Source: Hormiphora californensis (Eukaryota > Animalia > Ctenophora). From it: a stretch of 64,000 nucleotides of DNA. The stretch is taken from contig CM035350.1 in the NCBI GenBank assembly GCA_020137815.1, forward strand, positions 1,736,001-1,800,000. Direction: 5' to 3'. The position numbers were made by a program, and so were the translations under genes. The notes beneath the pieces were generated by a model. That model worked only from the letters and a program-made list of their open reading frames with translations. It ran no database searches and was not told the DNA's origin. Shown here one piece after another: positions 37,323 to 46,900 of the stretch (positions within the stretch are counted from its first letter, which is position 1; each line of letters opens with the position of its first letter).

Positions 37323-38093
37323 ATGAGTAACTCCTGGGACTCAGCGCATCTTTCGGATGGCTCAGATATGCCCGTTGTTGATGATAAAGTGTTGCAGCTT
37401 TACAATATGAGATTGTGCCCTTACGCGGAGCGTGCAGTTCTGGTCTTGCTTCACAAGAATCTTCCCTTCACCTGTACTAATATCAATCTCAAGAATAAGC
37501 CAACCTGGTTCCTCAATTCCAGCTTGGGAAAGGTACCAGTGGTGCTTTCCAATGGGAAAGCCATACCTGAGTCGCTTATTGTCTGTGATTTCCTCGACGA
37601 AGTGTATGAGAATGAGAAACTCCACCCATCTGATCCTGCTCAGAAAGCGCTTGATCGGGTTTTGGTTGATTGTCAGGGACAGATGATGTCTAGTCTCTAT
37701 CCCATCTTTGGTAAAATTCCTGGTAAAACCTTTACCAATGAGGAAAAGTTGGAAAAGTTCGACAGCCTACTGAAGTTTGTGAGGGATTTGGAGAAGGAGC
37801 TGACCACTAGAGCGACTCCGTTCTTGGGTGGAAATAAACCATGTATGGCAGATTACATGATATTTCCATTTTATGAGCGAATTGAAGCACTGCCCCAAAT
37901 CGTTCCAGAGCTTGGATCTGCACTCGATCTTCCCGGAGACCTTGCCTTGGTTAAGAAATGGCTGGTGTCCATGAGGGGAACTGAACCGGTGAAACAGTAT
38001 GGCCTATCACCAGCTCGACTTGCTAAAGCTACTCATGTCAGCCATGAAACGGGGGATTATGATGCAGCTATGTCTGCTTCGGCTGGACTTTAA
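37323..38093 (+). CDS. Glutathione S-transferase omega class, intronless
   Basis: LQLYNMRLCPYAERAVLVL (active-site CPY), INLKNKPTWF, GKVPV, ESLIVCDFLDE and PCMADYMIFPFYER. Confidence 0.93.
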   Translation: MSNSWDSAHLSDGSDMPVVDDKVLQLYNMRLCPYAERAVLVLLHKNLPFTCTNINLKNKPTWFLNSSLGKVPVVLSNGKAIPESLIVCDFLDEVYENEKLHPSDPAQKALDRVLVDCQGQMMSSLYPIFGKIPGKTFTNEEKLEKFDSLLKFVRDLEKELTTRATPFLGGNKPCMADYMIFPFYERIEALPQIVPELGSALDLPGDLALVKKWLVSMRGTEPVKQYGLSPARLAKATHVSHETGDYDAAMSASAGL

Positions 38094-38252: not shown

Positions 38253-41200
38253 ATGGCAAGTGATAATTATGTACTTTACCGGACATTTCAAGCAGTAGAA
38301 GTACTCTCTACAGATGAACAAGTCAATCGAGGTTAGAACAAAGACTAAGAAAATTATTAAAAACTCCAAATTCACAATTCACCATTTCCCATTCCTCAGC
38401 TATAAAGAGTCACGTTGTTCTGGAGCCTGTTATTGGTTTGGACTGCGAATGGAACTCTCAACAGTCCCCCACTAGGGTAGCACTTGTTCAGATCGCTACC
38501 AGGTCGCATGTCTTCCTGATCAGATTGTTCAAAATGCAGGGTATACCAACTGAACTTGCGGCACTACTTGCTAATGGAAATGTTCTCAAGGTAACGACAA
38601 TCTTACAATTGGTTATCAGCAAACAAATTGTTGGTTGATGTTTTCAGACGTTTCATATGTGTATTATTGATGCTATAATATCACAAAACAGTTATTTCTA
38701 ATTTGCCTGACAGTTGACATACGAACGACCGACAGTAGACAAACAACAAGACAGACTCAACATAACAGGTAACTAAAACTAGACCTTTTTGGACAATTTT
38801 CTCAAATTGTGAACGTCTACTTTTAGGTCGGTGTGAGTATTGATACAGACAAGAAAATGTTGCTGAAAGAGCCAGGGTGTACCACAGTAAGGGGACTAGT
38901 TGATCTAAAGAGCTTGGCCCTCACATCCGAGAGTTATGGCCGGGTACAGATGCAACACCTTGAAACGCTTCAAAGGAAAACCTATGGGCTTCCCGAGGCA
39001 GAGCAGATCCTAGCAAAGACCCGATGGAACCCTAAGATGGGGTTAGGACCGATGACTGTAGATTGTTTGGGGGTGGCACTGGACAAGGAGGGAAGTGCTC
39101 GATGGAGAGGTACAGATGATAACCATCTTATTATTGTTCTTGAATGTTTGTAATTTTTTTAGGTCCTCCCCGCGAATGTACTAATCATCGTCACATACTT
39201 TATCAGATGACTGGGAGGCGGACAGTCTATCAGCTCACCAGACCTCCTATGCTGCCGGAGATGCTGCCTCATCCCTTGAGATCTTCTATGCTCTTCTCAG
39301 TCAGAATCCACTGGGAGCCAGAGTTAATACAACTGAACTGAAAACCAACCAGGCATCAATTGACAACTTAGTGAGAGGGTGAGAGGAACATTTTGTAGTT
39401 TTACCAATGTTTTATTATTGTTGAAACCAATGTAAACCAACGTACTGATATGATACTCTTTTCAGAAAGATAGATATACCTCCATCTAAGAAAGTGAAGG
39501 GAGTGAGAAGGACTATTCTGGATTTAATCGCTTCTGTTACCCCAAGTTTCCAATTCGAATCCTATCTGGCCGCTCCTAAGCAGAAGAAAGAAAGGAAGCC
39601 CAAAAGAGGTAGCAGTCTTTTGATTTGTTATGATATCTGACTACAGTTTAGTATCTTGGTGAGAAATTCATGCCACTGAATTTGTAGTGGTGTGGATTTC
39701 TTACCAAGCTTGTCATCTCTGGATACAATAATATCATCAAGCCAACATCCTTTACCAAAGTTAACCAATAACCATGTTATCAAGTGTTTCTATGGAAGGC
39801 TTGATGGCATTAAATCATCGTATTATTATGTCCTATGTAGTGTAAGCCTAGTATTCTAGCTCTCATTTCTTAGTACCCTCATTCCCCTTGTTGTTTGTTT
39901 CAAGTGCATGTTTTAGCTACACCATGCCTCTACCTCCATCAGCAACCAAGAAGCCAGCACACGCAGATCCTGACCGGAAGAGGAATCCTTGCTCGTGCAG
40001 GTCAGTTTAAAAGGATGCATCTTGTTTCAAGTTCAAAACATTGTGTGACGCCATGATATCGCGAAATCTTTACTGACTGCTGCTCTCCCCAGGGCTTGTG
40101 CGAATTACGATGGAGGGGACCCATCCCAATCCAAACCGGGACCACAGTTTGAAGGTTGCCGGTTCAATGACGCTACCCTTCACGATGGTTCGACCGATAA
40201 AAAGAAGGCGCTGAATAGTTCTCTAGTCGCACATTTCAAGGACTTATCTCTGTCACCGAGCTTCGCCACCAAGCTTGATAAAATGCTAAAGCCTCCAACA
40301 AGAGTTCAGCAGCTTGGGATCCCTCTTCAGCAGAAGGGAGGTGACCTTGTTCTTTGTGCCCAGACTGGAACAGGGAAAACAGCTGCTTACCTCATCCCAA
40401 TGATTGATAAGATTATGAAGGAGCAGATTCCGGCAGGATCCCCGACCTTCTGCGTCATATCTCCAACTCGAGAGTTGGCTCTACAGATAGATGCAGAATT
40501 TAGGCGACTTTCTAATTCAACTTGCAAATCAGTCGTACTGACCGGTAGAAAAAGAGTTTCCCCAACTAGGCTGAATGACTGTCATATTCTAGTTGGCACA
40601 CCCGGAAAAGTTCGCTCTATGCTTTGGGACTGGGGATTAAACAAGGACTTTGATGTTTTCGTTGTTGATGGAGATTACAAAATAGCGAAGGAGGGTTATG
40701 GCCCAGGGTATATGAACAATTTGCTGCGAAAAGAGTTTCAGATTCGAGAAGACCACATTGGCCAAGAAGATATTGTCGATGCTTTGGTACACGAGATGGC
40801 AAATTTGGTAAAAGATAAGCAAAGGCCAGAACTCCCAGACTTTTACGTTGTCACAGAGACAGCCGAACAAGCAAAGGATATAAATGCTAAACTGAAGTCT
40901 CGCTTCATGAAACAACTACCAAGAAATTCTCCGTGGCCAGTATGTGAGTTTTCAGATATCCGCAATTTATACCAGTGCTATGCTATCATCGGTACCTTGG
41001 ACGACTACAAAGCGCTGGTTTTTGAAAAGAGGTTGAAGGGAGCCCTAACTCTTGAGAAGGTGCAAACGTTTGTAGTTGACGAGTTTGATCGAATGATGGG
41101 AAAAGGTTTTCTCCCTGAAATCGAGATGTTTTTACAAGATGTTGGTGACAACACCCAAGTTATTATGGCCAGTGCGACATGGAGACAGGAAGCTTTGAAG

Positions 41201-43547
41201 TCAGCACAAGAAATAATGAGGGATAACTTTGAACGGCTGCAAATTGGAAATGAGGGTTCTGCTCAAGAAGCTGTTGTACAGAAATTTGAACAGCTGGATA
41301 ATGAACGAAACAAGAGCCACCGACTGAATGAACTTCTCGTTGAACTTCTCCTCCCGCGGGCTGAAGCATTCTTTGCAAAACACAAGAACAACCCAGAACC
41401 CCGTCTACTAGACTTCCTGTTGACGGTCCTGAGCGACAAAGGAAACGAGTTCAGTGACCTGAAAGTTCTCGTGTTCTTTGAAACTCGAGAGAGTACCCGA
41501 GCAATGACCGAGTTCACTGCTGATAGAATCTACAACTATTTCAAGGGTCTATACTACAAAAGTTACCCTACAGCCGATAGAAATCAAGAAGATCTTATCT
41601 TGGAGAACTTTGGAGTTGTTTGTCTCAGTAGTGACCTGGAAGCTGTGGAGAGAGAGTCCCATATGAAAGCGTTCTCAGATGGGATTTACTCGATCATGTT
41701 TGCAACCAACGTGGCTGCACGAGGAATTGACCCACCCCGAGTGACCCATGTCATTAACTATCACCTCCCCTCATGCGAGTACCTTGGACATACTGCATTT
41801 GATGAGTACATCCACCGAATAGGCCGAACTGGTCGCCTTGGAAACCCGGGAGAGTCCATCTCCTTCATGCAGCCGGACAGGGATAGTGATATGGCTGCTG
41901 GATTTGTGGAAGTCTTAGCTAATTCGAATCAACCAGTTCCTGATTGGCTAAAGGAGTTTGCGAAACAAGGAGTGATCCTGACACAGAACCAGCTGGCTCA
42001 GGAGAGGGAGGCTCGACACCACGGTGGGGAAGGCCAGGGATTCACTCGCAAAGACAAAAAGAAGAAGGCACCCGGTGGAAGAAAACCTGCGGCCGCTGGA
42101 ACTTCCTGGGATCCCCAACACGGGCCAAATGCCACTGAGCTATGGGGAGATCAGGCGATTTAAAACTCTGTAAGACACTCTGTAAAACGATTGATCTGGA
42201 ATAATTTGCTTGTGATAATCAAAAACTGTGTAACCGCATTGATGATTATGTAGTTTATTAAACACTTTTTTACTCAAAATTAACTTTAATCACCGTTTTG
42301 TAATTGTCAATCTGCAGTTGGTTTTAAATGTTCAAATTGAGTTTTCAAATAAATTCGATTTCGACAGTTTTTATACCGAAAATTATATTGTAAACATTGC
42401 TTTAAATCCAATATTTACGGGAACAGTCGTGTATTTCTTGGTTGACTAAGTCATGAGTCAAGTGGATGGTAAAGTCGGATTTTTTGAAGTTCTCTCCCCA
42501 AATGCACATGCACACGCATGTGAAATTTATCAATGATGTGACGTGCAAATGATGACTCGCAAAGTATGTGACACGCAAAAAATCGAGCGCACGAGAAGGG
42601 GTGACAACTTCAAAAAATCCGACTTTAGACTGTGATAACCTAACGTTTGGCCAGAGGGGGGGGGGGCATTGTTATTAAAACTGACCAGCCACATGTTTTC
42701 TTCAGGGCCTGCTAAGGAGCCAACTCACTATCAAGTGAGCGACAAGGTGTTGTATGATAACTGCTCTCTGCTAGCCCCTGACGGTGCTATCCTGTGCACG
42801 TGCAGCCAGAAGAAAGCACAATGGTATCTGGATAACAACTTAGCAGATCCAGTCCCGGGAAGTGATCCCATGAGCGTCAAGCTGAGGTTTGAGCCCTCAG
42901 GCAGGCCCGATCAGGGGGATTATTACTGCCAGCGGAAGGAGAACAAGTGCTGCTGCTGTGGGTCGAGTGACAGGTTGGTAAGGAAGAATGTCGTTCCTCG
43001 GGAGTACAGGAAACATTTTCCCACCGTGTACAAAGACAAACAATCACACGATGTTGTGTTACTGTGTGTGAGGTGCCATTGTGTCAGTAACGTTAATGAT
43101 GCCTCGATGAGGGAGCAGTTAGCCAGGCAATACGGGGTACCTGTCAACATTGAAACTGCAACAAGGGCAGTGGACAAGTCTGCAATGAGGGCCCGGAGTA
43201 CAGCTAGAGCTCTCACATCGTCCCAGCAGATACCAGCGGAGAGAAGGGCTGAGCTGCTAGGTGAGCTGGAGAGATATCTTGGACATGTGCCAACTGAGGA
43301 GGAGGTGATGGAGTGTAGGGATATGAAGGTACAGGAGGAGAGATCTGGGATGAAGCATGGGGCTGATGTAGTGAAACAGGTGATGGAGGGATCACAAGGG
43401 CTGGAAGGACAGTCTGGGATGGAGGGACAGATAGGACAAGGAGTAGACGGGTTCGTTAGGAAGTGGAGGGAGTTCTTTGTAGCTACCATGAAGCCTCAAT
43501 ACCTACCTGACGGATGGAGTTGTGATCACAAAACACGCTATGAGTGA
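38253..43547 (+). CDS. EXD2: EXD2-like DEDDy 3'-5' exonuclease with C-terminal Zn/HNH-like domain (EXD2a)
   Basis: ExoI VIGLDCEW, VALVQIAT, ExoII VGVSIDTD and ExoIII DWEADSLSAHQTSYAAGDA. Last exon 42706-43547 (LYDNCSLLAPDG..CTCSQKKAQWYL, RKNVVPREYRKHFP, SHDVVLLCVRCH) joins the phase-1 donor after 39608. Confidence 0.88.
39924..42163 (+). CDS. Divergent Vasa/PL10/DDX3-like DEAD-box RNA helicase inside the last EXD2a intron (same strand)
   Basis: Exons 39924-40000 and 40093-42163 are in frame. Motifs: Q (F...PTRVQ), AQTGTGKT, SPTRELA, GTPG, DEFD, SAT, ARGID, YIHRIGRTGRLGN and the DDX3/4-type QPVPDWL. Confidence 0.88.
42470..42628. mobile_element. Short MITE
   Basis: TAAAGTCGGATTTTTTGAAGTT ... 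AACTTCAAAAAATCCGACTTTA. Confidence 0.7.
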
Positions 43548-43673: not shown

Positions 43674-43757
<84 letters not shown>

Positions 43758-43929
43758 CCTCTCTCTCTCCCTCTCTCTCTCTCTCCCTCTCTCTCTCCTC
43801 TCTCTCTCTCTGCTGTATGATCTACCACCTGACTCTCTTCACTGTCACATAGCACAGGACCAGGACATGTTCATCCAGTTTGTTTGAAGCGTGTTGAAAC
43901 TACAAACTCTCTCTCTCTCTCTCTCCACT

Positions 43930-46900
43930 ATGCATTATACGTGTGCTCAACGGGTCATCACTATAGAGGATAAAGAACAATGTGATAAAGGTACGTGTCT
44001 TGCTATTTGGGTGATCTCTTGTTTCTGTTTCTGCTTTTTGATTGGTATATTGTGACTGCCACTTGTTTCTAACATATCAAGTTGAATGCCTGTGTTAAAT
44101 ATTACAGTACCTGTTTGTTTCAGAGTTTGCTGAACACATAATCAATACCAAAACTCGCTTTATTGGGTTGGACTGCGAATGGAACCCTGGTCGAAAGGTA
44201 ACATTGTCAACATGATATCCTTCCAAAGTTTCTATTTCACCAATAACCTCACTTCTACTCAGCCCGGTTTCATACTCTTTTTGTCCAGTGTTCATTCATA
44301 TTGTCAAATCCCTTTCTAGGTGTCACTCATGCAAGTAGCGACTACAAGTGTTATTCTACTAATCAGACTGAACAAAATGAACCTGATTCTACCTGAAAAC
44401 CTACGGAAGGTCCTTGCAGAACCCAAAATAATAAAGGTATGTATGGGAGGTATGTATGGGAGGTTTAGGGAGACCACCTGTGTGCGGCAGTGTTTTAATC
44501 TGTCCAATGGAGAGTTTGAATGTGTGTGTGTAAAGCAACTGATGAGATCCCAGACCCATATCTCTACCTAATTATGTGTTAATTATCTACTGAAACAAAA
44601 GATGGTCTACACAGAACTATATCTTGAGTTGTTGAACAGACTCTCTCTCCCCTCCCCCTCTCTCTCTCTCTCTTTCTGTACATTTACACACCATCATTAA
44701 ATTTAAGGGTACACCTGGCGTTTTTCATCATCGAGTGCCCAACCAAATGACTTCACCAGGGTTTAGGCCATACAAAATGGACCTCAAATATGCAATTTTA
44801 GCCCTAAATTCGAATTCATATTTTTGCTACAGCCTATTTTCAAAGTGGCGTTTTTTCAACTTTTGTTGGAATTTTTAACCTCAGGACCACTTTTTTTGAG
44901 ATAGAAACATTAAATTCTTGGAATTTGAAGAGAATATAAAGGTAAATAAGCCCAAAGAAGGATTTTTGAAATGGAGCTTATTTCTGGCCATGAGAACGGT
45001 TTACTTTTTTGCTTCTTTGACACGCTGGCTGAGAATGTTCCCATGCTTCATTAGAGATGAAAATCTGGAAATAGTTGCTCAAAACGATTATCTATGTGGC
45101 CCAAAAATTTTGGAACTTTCCCGCCAAAGATGTGGTGTACAGAGCTTGTTTTGTGAAACCCGTCTTTTTGAAAAAGATGGAAATTCCCTGTATCTCAAAA
45201 ACGGATGATCGTAGAGACCTGCGACCAAGCTTAATCGATTCAGAAGGTCCGATTTTGGGGGGGTCTTATGATAGACATTTTGCTCCTACTCCAACCGTTT
45301 TTGCTGTAATTGCGAAAACAGCAAAAACGGTTGGAGTAGGAGCAAAATGTCTCTCATAAGACCCCCCCCAAAATCGGACCTTCTGAATCGATTAAGCTTG
45401 GTCGCAGGTCTCTACGATCATCCGTTTTTGAGATACAGGGAATTTCCATCTTTTTCAAAAAGACGGGTTTCACAAAACAAGCTCTGTACACCACATCTTT
45501 GGCGGGAAAGTTCCAAAATTTTTGGGCCACATAGATAATCGTTTTGAGCAACTATTTCCAGATTTTCATCTCAAATGAAGCATGGGAACATTCTCAGCCA
45601 GCGTGTCAAAGAAGCAAAAAAGTAAACCGTTCTCATGGCCAGAAATAAGCTCCATTTCAAAAATCCTTCTTTGGGCTTAATCACCTTTATATTCTCTTCA
45701 AATTCCAAGAATTTAATGTTTCTATCTCAAAAAAAGTGGTCCTGAGGTTAAAAATTCCAACAAAAGTTGAAAAAACGCCACTTTGAAAATAGGCTGTAGC
45801 AAAAATATGAATTCGAATTTAGGGCTAAAATTGCATATTTGAGGTCCATTTTGTATGGCCTAAACCCTGGTGAAGTCATTTGGTTGGGCACTCGATGATG
45901 AAAAACGCCAGGTGTACCCTTAATCTCCCCCTCTACTCAAACCCATCCCGAGATCAGTAACCACATTCCATCCCAGTTGGGAATAAACATTGACGGTGAT
46001 AACGATAAACTGAAGGAGGATTGCGGTTGCATAATTCGGAGCTGGTTGGACCTCCGGAATCTAGTCTTCAGAAGCCCCTGCTGGGGTCCCACTCTTCTCT
46101 CCAAGATCCAGGACTTTGAGTGGGAAGTGAAAACGGAACAGAGTTTCTCAAATGTACGTGCAATTCGTTGAAATTTAACAGTTTACTTTTGGATCAAACT
46201 CATACACCATCACAACTTCCATGTGCTCTTATCCTATCGCGATCTAAGCCGTGTTTTCTATTTTCTATTAAATAAACCAGCCCCCACCCCCTCCACTAGA
46301 AACCAAATGCTGCTGACTATGCTGACAGTAGAAGGTTTGGATGGTGCCCTAAGATCGGAATGGAGCCGCTAGTTAGTGACTGCTTTGGAGTGACTCTACC
46401 AAAGAATAACTCTGTTAGATGGGGAGGTAAGTAGCCTCAGGGTTTAGTTAGAACAAATTAAGAGGTATGTTTACCATACTATGTATTTGTGTTTTCATGA
46501 TAACCAAAGATATCTTATTTTAATGTTTTGTTGTGTCTCTGCTGGGAAAATACATCACTACCAATTGATAACCCCCACCCCCTTCTCTCTAGATGACTGG
46601 GAAGCGGAAGAGTTGAAGCCGTTTCAGAAGGCCTACGCCGCAAATGATGCAGCTGCAGCTCTGGATATCTTTGTAGTACTTGTATACGCTAGTTCTGTCG
46701 GGAAAGTCCTGCCAGTTGAGCTAGATGACTCATTTGATGTAGAACAACTAGTTCCACAATACCAGAGCGAGTTGTTAGATGCAGCTGGGGAGTTGATTGA
46801 GATAAAGTTTATCCAGACACCAGAACAAATGGAACTGATTTATAAACTTATCAGGGAGACAGATCCAACTTTCAATCTTACTGCGTACAGCAAACACAGC

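What the first reader, a model, noticed from the sequence alone, without database searches (positions are those of the whole stretch)
38253..43547. EXD2 exonuclease with a DEAD-box helicase in its last intron: possible switchable exonuclease-helicase fusion
Seen: the EXD2a exon ending at 39608 (…KPKR, phase 1) joins in frame to the canonical EXD2 C-terminal exon at 42706. It also joins in frame to an AG at 39941-39942, which leads through 39943-40000 and 40093-42163 into a complete Vasa/DDX3-like helicase. One locus could therefore encode exonuclease+HNH-like or exonuclease+DEAD-box proteins via alternative last exons. Also seen: the helicase has its own in-frame ATG (ACCATG, 39924) just after another acceptor (TTTTAG 39911-39916), which fits an independent same-strand nested, trans-spliced gene; that acceptor is out of frame for fusion. 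Known: DEDD nucleases partner with DEAD-box proteins in small-RNA pathways (EXD1-TDRD12; C. elegans MUT-7 with MUT-14), and WRN fuses a related nuclease to a RecQ helicase. Inference: a lineage-specific nuclease/RNA-helicase module, either fused or co-transcribed.
Basis: partly seen in the sequence, partly recalled or inferred. Interest (0 to 1): 0.85.

Follow-up and report, generated by a model that had tools for sequence, protein, structure and literature searches.

The report
Helicase gene nested inside EXD2 intron
A complete, very divergent Vasa/DDX3-like RNA helicase gene lies, in the same direction, inside the last intron of a comb jelly's EXD2 exonuclease gene; the evidence favours two separate genes, an arrangement already published as common in this genome, and nothing supports a fusion protein.

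Summary
A six-exon EXD2 gene (38253-43547, about 569 aa) is colinear with named EXD2 proteins. Its 3,097-base last intron holds a two-exon DEAD-box helicase gene (ATG 39924, stop 42163, about 715 aa).

The fusion idea has no support:
- The in-frame AG at 39941-42 is one of four such AGs among 26, about what chance gives.
- Both close relatives in the protein database (712 aa; their id style suggests Pleurobrachia bachei) start at the same Met and carry no exonuclease part.
- A 63% identical paralogue on another chromosome stands alone, with the same small intron.
- None of the ten longest proteins with the EXD2 C-terminal domain has a helicase domain.

The genome matches Hormiphora californensis (110.7 Mb, 626 copies of its published spliced leader). 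In that species 2,357 of 14,265 genes are nested in introns, many parallel to their host.

Only a seawater RNA run was available. It confirms two EXD2 splice junctions and covers the helicase 3'UTR, but does not cross the decisive donor at 39608. The fusion is therefore unsupported, not refuted.

Interest is low to moderate.

The parts
38253..38331 (+). EXD2 exon 1 (ATG 38253; 26 codons plus 1 base; no hydrophobic anchor segment)
   Evidence: Reading. The acceptor-like cttgctttag ends 4 bases before the ATG.
38400..38590 (+). EXD2 exon 2, start of the DEDDy exonuclease domain (GLDCEW motif)
   Evidence: Pfam PF01612 E=2.6e-4 on the exon alone. BLASTP to EXD2 proteins at their residues about 60-135. 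Junction 38590>38827 is seen in an RNA contig.
38827..39109 (+). EXD2 exon 3, middle of the exonuclease domain, with a roughly 30-aa insert
   Evidence: Colinear with EXD2 proteins. Both of its junctions are seen in the spliced contig of run X1.
39207..39378 (+). EXD2 exon 4, ExoIII motif (YAAGDA)
   Evidence: Junction 39109>39207 is seen in the RNA contig. The donor at 39379 is predicted only.
39466..39608 (+). EXD2 exon 5, variable basic linker ending KPKR, phase 1
   Evidence: The frame is forced by stops in the other frames. No sequence similarity to other EXD2 proteins. Its 47 aa fill the 45-aa unaligned gap of the Tubulanus EXD2.
39609..42705 (+). EXD2 intron 5 (3,097 bases), the host intron of the helicase gene
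   Evidence: GT at 39609 and cttcag at 42700-42705, with phase 1 on both sides. The join itself was not seen in reads.
39911..39916 (+). TTTTAG acceptor-like site 7 bases before the helicase ATG; candidate spliced-leader acceptor
   Evidence: Sequence. The same pattern precedes the GST and EXD2 ATGs. The spliced leader is abundant in the genome. No reads carrying the leader were available.
39924..40000 (+). Helicase coding exon 1 (MPLPPSATKKPAHADPDRKRNPCSC, phase 2)
   Evidence: 92% identical to the N-termini of P0001 and P0002, which start at the same Met.
39941..39942 (+).
   Evidence: In frame, but one of four such AGs among 26. No evidence that it is used.
40093..42163 (+). Helicase exon 2: whole DEAD-box core, C-terminal tail and TAA stop
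   Evidence: Pfam DEAD and Helicase_C. 88-89% identical to P0001 and P0002. The splice 40000>40093 is kept in those proteins and in the chromosome-10 paralogue.
42164..42370 (+). Helicase 3'UTR with ATTAAA at 42257 and AATAAA at 42348; the end point is inferred
   Evidence: Hexamers. A 160-base contig of the RNA run lies on 42164-42323.
42470..42627 (.). Miniature inverted-repeat element (30-base terminal inverted repeats) in the host intron, downstream of the helicase
   Evidence: Inverted repeat I1. At least 40 copies at about 79-80% identity across the chromosomes.
42706..43547 (+). EXD2 exon 6: EXD2-specific C-terminal (HNH-like) domain and TGA stop
   Evidence: 2,230 homologues. The best named ones are EXD2 of fish, primates, oyster and flies, at 42-47% identity over their C-terminal halves. 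Single copy in this genome.

Best explanation
These are two separate genes that make two separate proteins.

The host is the comb jelly's EXD2: a DEDDy 3'-5' exonuclease, a basic linker and the EXD2-specific HNH-like C-terminal domain. Its mRNA is made by splicing 39608 to 42706, which removes a 3.1-kb intron.

Inside that intron, in the same direction, lies a complete gene for a lineage-restricted, very divergent DEAD-box helicase. Its nearest solved relatives are Vasa and DDX3. Its mRNA most likely begins at the acceptor 39916/39917, where it receives the trans-spliced leader. It is translated from the ACCATG at 39924, loses its own 92-base intron, and is polyadenylated after AATAAA at 42348.

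Shown here:
- Both gene structures, by frame and by homology.
- Two host splice junctions.
- RNA-run contig cover of the helicase 3'UTR.
- The stand-alone nature of the helicase's relatives.

Inferred:
- The 39608>42706 join.
- Leader addition at 39917.
- The poly(A) site.
- Whether the helicase pre-mRNA starts at a promoter of its own in the 308 unique bases upstream, or is cut out of host transcripts.

The pairing of a nuclease with a helicase is best read as coincidence in a genome where about one gene in six is nested.
For: EXD2 host gene:
- Exons 2, 3, 4 and 6 hit the same EXD2 proteins in colinear order. In Tubulanus EXD2 the matches fall at 79-135, 136-206, 209-260 and 306-569.
- Exon 6 is the EXD2 C-terminal domain.
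- The summed model is 569 aa, against 546-634 aa for named EXD2 proteins.
- The spliced contig confirms two junctions.

Helicase as an independent gene:
- P0001 and P0002 (712 aa, 88-89% identical) start MPLPPSATKK and keep the CSCR|ACA splice.
- The paralogue at C10:592368-594248 (63% identical) has its own short exon 1 (MTCKC) and the same phase-2 intron. It has no EXD2 exon nearby, and EXD2 exon 6 is single copy.
- ATTAAA (42257) and AATAAA (42348) follow the stop, and a 160-base contig of the RNA run covers 42164-42323.

Genome context:
- 110.7 Mb in 45 contigs, with 626 copies of the published H. californensis leader and none in the control.
- The genome paper reports 2,357 nested intronic genes among 14,265. 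Many are parallel to the host, 1,109 are flanked by transposable elements, and at least 56% of Iso-Seq reads carry the leader (PMC8527503).
- A transposable element flanks this nested gene too.
Against: - No read or contig crosses the 39608 donor, so neither the host join nor its absence from helicase mRNA was seen directly.
- The acceptor at 39942 looks as good by eye as the real acceptors.
- In host pre-mRNA, the acceptor at 39916 has an upstream donor only 308 bases away. How cis-splicing to it is avoided is unexplained; such a join would be out of frame.
- The P. bachei proteins are gene models that would start at the first ATG in any case.
- Synteny in other comb jellies could not be examined.
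Confidence: 0.8

Rival explanations
1. Alternative last exons give two proteins from one gene. Splicing 39608>42706 would make exonuclease plus HNH-like domain. Splicing 39608>39943 would make exonuclease plus DEAD-box helicase, about 1,000 aa.
For: The join is in frame and open, and the AG at 39941-42 follows a pyrimidine-rich stretch. Nuclease-helicase fusions exist elsewhere, such as WRN (general knowledge).
Against: - Four of 26 AGs are in frame, which is what chance gives.
- The pyrimidine tract consists of Pro/Leu/Ser codons.
- Both close relatives are 712-aa stand-alone proteins, although the search covered lengths up to 1,205 aa.
- The paralogue is stand-alone.
- None of the ten longest proteins with the EXD2 C-terminal domain has DEAD or Helicase_C.
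- The conserved Met and the six residues before the proposed acceptor would serve no purpose in a fusion.
Confidence: 0.05
2. One host pre-mRNA is processed in two mutually exclusive ways. Either the intron is removed, giving full-length EXD2. Or the helicase is released by leader trans-splicing at 39917 and polyadenylation near 42370. The second route would leave a truncated exonuclease-only message that reads through 39608 for 10 codons and ends after ATTAAA at 39809. This would resemble an operon.
For: - Same strand, with only 308 unique bases between the host donor and the helicase acceptor.
- ATTAAA at 39809 lies 102 bases before the acceptor.
- GST, EXD2 and the helicase are tightly packed on one strand, each with an AG just before its ATG. 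The gap from the GST stop to the EXD2 ATG is 159 bases.
- Leader trans-splicing is widespread in this genome.
- The genome paper notes that parallel nested genes need some special processing.
Against: - About 0.5 A/T-only poly(A) hexamers are expected by chance in 315 bases of this composition (my estimate).
- The genome paper does not mention operons.
- No reads bear on the question.
- The paralogue is presumably expressed without such a host.
Confidence: 0.12
3. EXD2 has split into separate genes here: an exonuclease-only gene (exons 1-5, ending 10 codons into the 'intron') and a separate HNH-like gene starting at the in-frame ATG at about 42693. In that case the helicase lies between two genes, not inside one.
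For: - An in-frame ATG lies just before the 42705 acceptor (MFSSGPAKE...).
- Many homologues of exon 6 are stand-alone proteins of 244-280 aa.
- The 39608>42706 join was not seen.
Against: - Matching phase 1 on both sides, with a strong acceptor at 42705.
- Colinearity and total length match animal EXD2.
- All named animal homologues examined carry both domains.
Confidence: 0.05

Closest known systems
Parallel nested intronic genes of Hormiphora californensis (Schultz et al. 2021, PMC8527503)
   Same: A complete gene on the host's strand inside a single host intron, flanked by a transposable element, in a genome with abundant leader trans-splicing. This is the class the paper describes: 2,357 such genes in 1,654 hosts.
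   Different: The paper text read here does not name this pair. The pairing of a nuclease host with a Vasa-like helicase guest is particular to this locus.
EXD2 (exonuclease 3'-5' domain-containing protein 2) of animals
   Same: A DEDDy exonuclease domain with DxE, D and YxxxD motifs, followed by a linker and the EXD2-specific HNH-like C-terminal domain. Identity is 42-47% over exon 6.
   Different: The first exon codes only 26 residues, with no hydrophobic segment. Human EXD2 has an N-terminal membrane anchor (PMC6648332). There is also a roughly 30-aa insert in the exonuclease domain and a Gly/Gln-rich insert near the C-terminus.
Vasa/DDX4 and DDX3/PL10 DEAD-box helicases
   Same: - All core motifs are present: Q, AQTGTGKT, PTRELA, GTPGK, SAT, ARGID and HRIGRTGR.
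- The post-motif-VI segment (QPVPDWL) aligns to Vasa.
- Drosophila Vasa is the best solved match (2e-49), ahead of Bombyx Vasa and DDX3X.
   Different: - Only about 30% identical to any protein outside its family.
- Motif II is DEFD.
- There is a roughly 143-aa insert between motifs Ib and II that repeats the Ib-II segment, and a further insert after motif IV.
- The N-terminus has a CxCRAC motif and no zinc knuckles or RGG repeats.
- A canonical DEAD-box gene of the same genome scores about 600 bits to its orthologue, against 171 bits here.
WRN (DEDD exonuclease fused to a RecQ helicase); EXD1-TDRD12 and MUT-7/MUT-14 partnerships
   Different: Here the association is only genomic position. No fused transcript, fused relative or co-expression was shown. 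The helicase is a DEAD-box protein, not RecQ.
   Same: A same-strand nested gene with a splice site that would allow an in-frame fusion. The follow-up judged it two separate messages, with leader trans-splicing.
   Different: Different genes. I did not re-test that locus.

Membership tests
EXD2 | DEDDy 3'-5' exonuclease domain with its catalytic motifs | tested here: met
   Pfam PF01612 on exon 2 alone scores 21.3 bits, below the 23.6 cut-off because it is only a piece. Exons 2-4 align colinearly to EXD2 proteins, with GLDCEW, the ExoII Asp and YAAGDA present.
EXD2 | EXD2-specific C-terminal HNH-like domain | tested here: met
   Exon 6 has 2,230 homologues. The best named ones are EXD2 of Arapaima, primates, Ostrea and Bactrocera, with E-values of 1e-57 to 1e-61 over their C-terminal halves.
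EXD2 | Both domains on one transcript (join 39608>42706) | not testable with these tools
   No contig of the only RNA run crosses 39608. The join is inferred from matching phase, a strong acceptor and colinearity.
EXD2 | N-terminal membrane anchor, as in human EXD2 (PMC6648332) | tested here: inconclusive
   Exon 1 codes 26 residues with no hydrophobic stretch, and only 159 bases separate it from the GST stop. No transmembrane predictor was run, and an upstream exon is not excluded.
DEAD-box RNA helicases | Two RecA-like domains (Pfam DEAD and Helicase_C) with motifs Q, I, Ia, Ib, II, III, IV, V and VI | tested here: met
   PF00270 6e-36 and PF00271 2e-19. The motifs were read. Motif II is D-E-F-D in all four family members: the acidic residues are kept and Ala is replaced.
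Vasa/DDX4 subfamily | Orthology to Vasa (tree placement); N-terminal zinc knuckles or RGG repeats | tested here: inconclusive
   Vasa is the best solved match, but only by 21-34 bits over Bombyx Vasa and DDX3X. Word-based searching puts DDX43 and bacterial RhlE next, at about 30% identity. No knuckle or RGG is seen in the N-terminus. It is not filed as Vasa.
Parallel nested intronic gene (definition of PMC8527503) | The guest transcript lies within a single intron of a host gene, on the same strand | tested here: met
   The helicase coding sequence (39924-42163) and the 3'UTR contig (to 42323) lie inside 39609-42705 of the EXD2 model. This depends on the inferred host join.
Exonuclease-helicase fusion protein | A transcript or protein carrying both the EXD2 exonuclease and the helicase | tested here: not met
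   Close relatives are 712-aa helicases only. The paralogue is stand-alone. Ten long proteins with the EXD2 domain lack helicase domains. Reads at the junction itself were not available.
Spliced-leader trans-spliced gene | Leader joined at an acceptor just upstream of the ATG | not testable with these tools
   The acceptor-like TTTTAG ends 7 bases before the ATG, and the genome holds 626 leader copies. No reads carrying the leader could be laid.

The most novel reading that the evidence does not exclude
The locus is a processing switch. Each EXD2 pre-mRNA would either be spliced 39608>42706 to give full-length EXD2, or be trans-spliced at 39917 and polyadenylated inside the intron. The second route would give the Vasa-like helicase plus a truncated exonuclease-only EXD2. 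Output of the HNH-bearing nuclease and of the helicase would then be reciprocally coupled, like an operon hidden in an intron.
Probability: 0.12. Interest if true: 0.55.

Novelty: new member of a known kind. Interest (0 to 1): 0.25.

Why it matters
If the two genes are independent, as the evidence indicates, this is one more of the roughly 2,400 nested genes already reported for this comb jelly. Its main use is as a clean, compact test case of how a genome with leader trans-splicing keeps a same-strand guest gene from being cis-spliced into its host: the host donor lies only 308 bases from the guest acceptor.

The helicase itself is a minor curiosity. It is a family so far found only in two closely related comb-jelly genomes. 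It is Vasa-like, has DEFD in place of DEAD, and carries an internal repeat of the motif Ib-II segment. It may interest people who study comb-jelly germline or stem-cell RNA helicases.

A real fusion or processing switch would matter more, but nothing found here points to one.

Tried and rejected
- RNA evidence. The single run search found only a seawater RNA run with 5% of the words, and a small run of 'organism A' with nothing laid. No record crosses 39608, so the decisive junction count could not be made.
- Two profile searches for a full-length comb-jelly EXD2 protein used alignments of a named EXD2 with the window's exons as separate rows. They returned only EXD2 of other animal groups and unnamed proteins; none was more than 58% identical to any window exon.
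- Two metagenome scans with the helicase found nothing or only generic helicases at 24-41% identity. Those loci, including one from a human oral metagenome, were not used further.
- The structure prediction of the helicase from four sequences gave mean pLDDT 40.8. That is too poor to use, so no fold search was run.
- Exon 6 has no solved relative; the KRas hits at E of about 0.02 are chance.
- The genome paper has no supplementary files held, so the published annotation of this locus could not be read.
- Rejected: that the helicase is the species' canonical Vasa or DDX5. It is far too divergent (compare).
- Rejected: that it is a retrocopy. Both paralogues keep the same intron.


Full report
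**What is there**

The EXD2-like gene has six exons:
- 38253-38331, 38400-38590, 38827-39109, 39207-39378, 39466-39608 and 42706-43547.
- All introns are GT..AG.
- The fifth exon ends ...KPKR in phase 1, and the sixth starts after cttcag in the matching phase.
- The summed coding length is 1,710 bases, or 569 residues.

Inside the 3,097-base fifth intron, on the same strand, lies a second gene:
- ACCATG, with the ATG at 39924.
- A 77-base first coding exon up to 40000.
- A 92-base intron.
- One long exon, 40093-42163. Together the two exons code 715 residues.
- TTTTAG ends at 39916, seven bases before the ATG.
- The AG at 39941-42 would join in frame to 39608.

**The host is EXD2**

- Exon 6 searched against 1.84 billion representatives gave 2,230 homologues.
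- The best named ones are 'exonuclease 3'-5' domain-containing protein 2' of a fish, primates, an oyster, flies and a moth. They match over their C-terminal halves at 42-47% identity.
- Exons 2, 3 and 4 hit the same proteins further upstream, in colinear order. In the Tubulanus protein the matches fall at 79-135, 136-206 and 209-260, with exon 6 at 306-569.
- Exon 5 is an unalignable linker of 47 residues, against an unaligned gap of 45.
- The DxE, ExoII Asp and YxxxD motifs are present.
- Human EXD2 has an exonuclease domain, a predicted HNH-like domain and an N-terminal membrane anchor (PMC6648332). The first two are here. The 26-residue first exon shows no anchor.
- A 533-base contig of a seawater RNA run, 95-99% identical, skips exactly 38591-38826 and 39110-39206. 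Those two junctions are therefore real.
- The 39608>42706 join was not covered. It rests on phase, acceptor quality and colinearity.

**The guest is a divergent DEAD-box helicase**

- Pfam finds DEAD (6e-36) and Helicase_C (2e-19).
- Among solved structures, Drosophila Vasa is best (2e-49). Bombyx Vasa (6e-43), DDX3X (4e-39) and Dbp2/DDX17 follow.
- The alignment to Vasa breaks into three blocks. About 143 extra residues lie between motifs Ib and II, and a further insert follows motif IV.
- The first insert is an internal repeat of the Ib-II segment. 'LNDCHILVGTPGK...FDVFVVDGD' aligns to 'LYQCYAIIGTLDD...VQTFVVDEFD' with score 39, against 22.3 +/- 3.9 for shuffles (0 of 500 reach it).
- Motif II is DEFD.
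- In the 5.8-billion-protein search, only two proteins are close: P0001 and P0002, at 88-89% identity and 712 residues. Their EukProt ids are in the style used for Pleurobrachia bachei. The next hits are DDX43 and bacterial RhlE, at about 30%.
- For scale, an ordinary DDX5-type gene of the same genome scores about 600 bits to its orthologue.
- 'Vasa/DDX3-like' is therefore a fair nearest neighbour, not a family assignment.

**Is it fused to EXD2?**

Four lines say no.
- P0001 and P0002 both begin MPLPPSATKKPAHA, the Met at 39924, and keep the CSCR|ACA splice. They have no exonuclease part, although the search admitted proteins of up to 1,205 residues.
- The genome has a paralogue at C10:592368-594248 (63% identical). 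It has its own short first exon (MTCKC) and the same phase-2 intron. Its neighbours are a minus-strand GST and a LINE reverse transcriptase, not an EXD2. EXD2 exon 6 is single copy. The family therefore exists as stand-alone genes, and was copied as DNA, not as a retrocopy.
- The in-frame AG is not special. Of 26 AGs between 39609 and 40000, four give an open in-frame join. The pyrimidines before 39942 are the codons of PLPPS.
- None of the ten longest proteins carrying the EXD2 C-terminal domain has a helicase domain. Extra domains there were trypsin and HRDC.

**Genome context**

- The assembly has 110,691,255 bases in 45 contigs.
- It holds 626 copies of the 3' part of the published Hormiphora californensis spliced leader, with none in the reversed control. 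The paper describes 110 Mb in 44 scaffolds and 718 leader copies. I take the genome to be that species or a very close relative.
[quoted passage not shown] Of the nested genes, 1,109 are flanked by transposable elements. The leader is on at least 56% of Iso-Seq reads.
- This locus fits that picture. A 158-base inverted-repeat element with at least 40 copies lies at 42470-42627, between the helicase and exon 6. The 315 bases upstream of the helicase ATG are unique.
- GST, EXD2 and the helicase each have an AG-ended pyrimidine stretch one to seven bases before the ATG, with A at -3. This is what leader acceptors look like.
- With one gene in six nested, a helicase inside a nuclease gene needs no functional explanation.

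**How it most likely works**

The host mRNA removes the whole intron. The guest mRNA receives the leader at 39917, is translated from 39924, and ends after AATAAA at 42348. A 160-base contig of the RNA run lies on 42164-42323.

Open questions:
- Does the guest start at a promoter within 39609-39916, or is it cut from host pre-mRNA?
- How is cis-splicing from 39608 to 39916 avoided? It would be out of frame, with a stop near 40212.

The most interesting reading not excluded is a processing switch, in which trans-splicing plus internal polyadenylation competes with removal of the intron. ATTAAA at 39809, 102 bases before the acceptor, would fit an operon-like upstream 3' end. But about 0.5 such hexamers are expected by chance there (my estimate).

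**Limits**

- The run search offered only one useful run, and read laying allowed one call.
- No comb-jelly EXD2 protein or genomic relative could be fetched.
- The structure model was unusable.
I did not re-test it.

**Verdict**

The nested-gene reading is supported at about 0.8. The fusion stands at about 0.05 and the split-EXD2 reading at about 0.05. The host-pre-mRNA switch, at about 0.12, is a variant of the nested-gene reading, not a separate alternative. This is a new member of a published kind, with interest of 0.25.

Noticed in passing
window 40616-41044 (helicase residues about 175-317): The helicase's first RecA domain contains an internal repeat of the motif Ib-II segment. The first copy keeps GTPGK but has VVDGD; the second has GTLDD but keeps VDEFD. 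The alignment scores 39 against 22.3 +/- 3.9 for shuffles. The repeat is conserved in all four family members.
   Followed up: partly
window 42470-42627: A miniature inverted-repeat element with 30-base terminal repeats has at least 40 copies at about 80% identity on many chromosomes. Copies from elsewhere explain the partly fitting contigs of run X1 at 42566-42628.
   Followed up: partly
window 37323-38093: An intronless glutathione S-transferase gene (Pfam GST_N/GST_C) ends only 159 bases before the EXD2 ATG, on the same strand. GST, EXD2 and the helicase each have an acceptor-like AG just before the ATG. This forms a tight same-strand cluster, possibly processed by leader trans-splicing.
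   Followed up: partly
No second copy of the EXD2 C-terminal exon exists anywhere in the genome, so this neighbour is an exonuclease-domain paralogue without the HNH-like domain.
   Followed up: partly
window 38253-38331: This EXD2 has only a 26-residue first exon, with no hydrophobic segment. It may lack the N-terminal mitochondrial outer-membrane anchor described for human EXD2.
   Followed up: no
window 44735-44878; L009:1665-1904 and L009:2844-3047: The same short open frame (…GFRPYKMDLKYAILAL.SNSYFCYSLFSKWRFFNF…) occurs downstream of EXD2 in the window and twice upstream of the chromosome-10 helicase paralogue. It is probably a dispersed repeat.
   Followed up: no
window 43687-43830 and about 43907-43927: Long (CT)n microsatellites lie just downstream of the EXD2 stop codon.
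   Followed up: no
L009:7162-9471 (G000 C10, about 595.7-598.0 kb): An intact-looking 770-residue open frame with the look of a LINE reverse transcriptase lies 1.3 kb downstream of the helicase paralogue.
   Followed up: no
P0001 and P0002: The two close relatives carry consecutive ids and are 86% identical to each other. They are either a tandem pair or redundant haplotype copies; the genome paper warns of haplotype redundancy in the P. bachei assembly.
   Followed up: no
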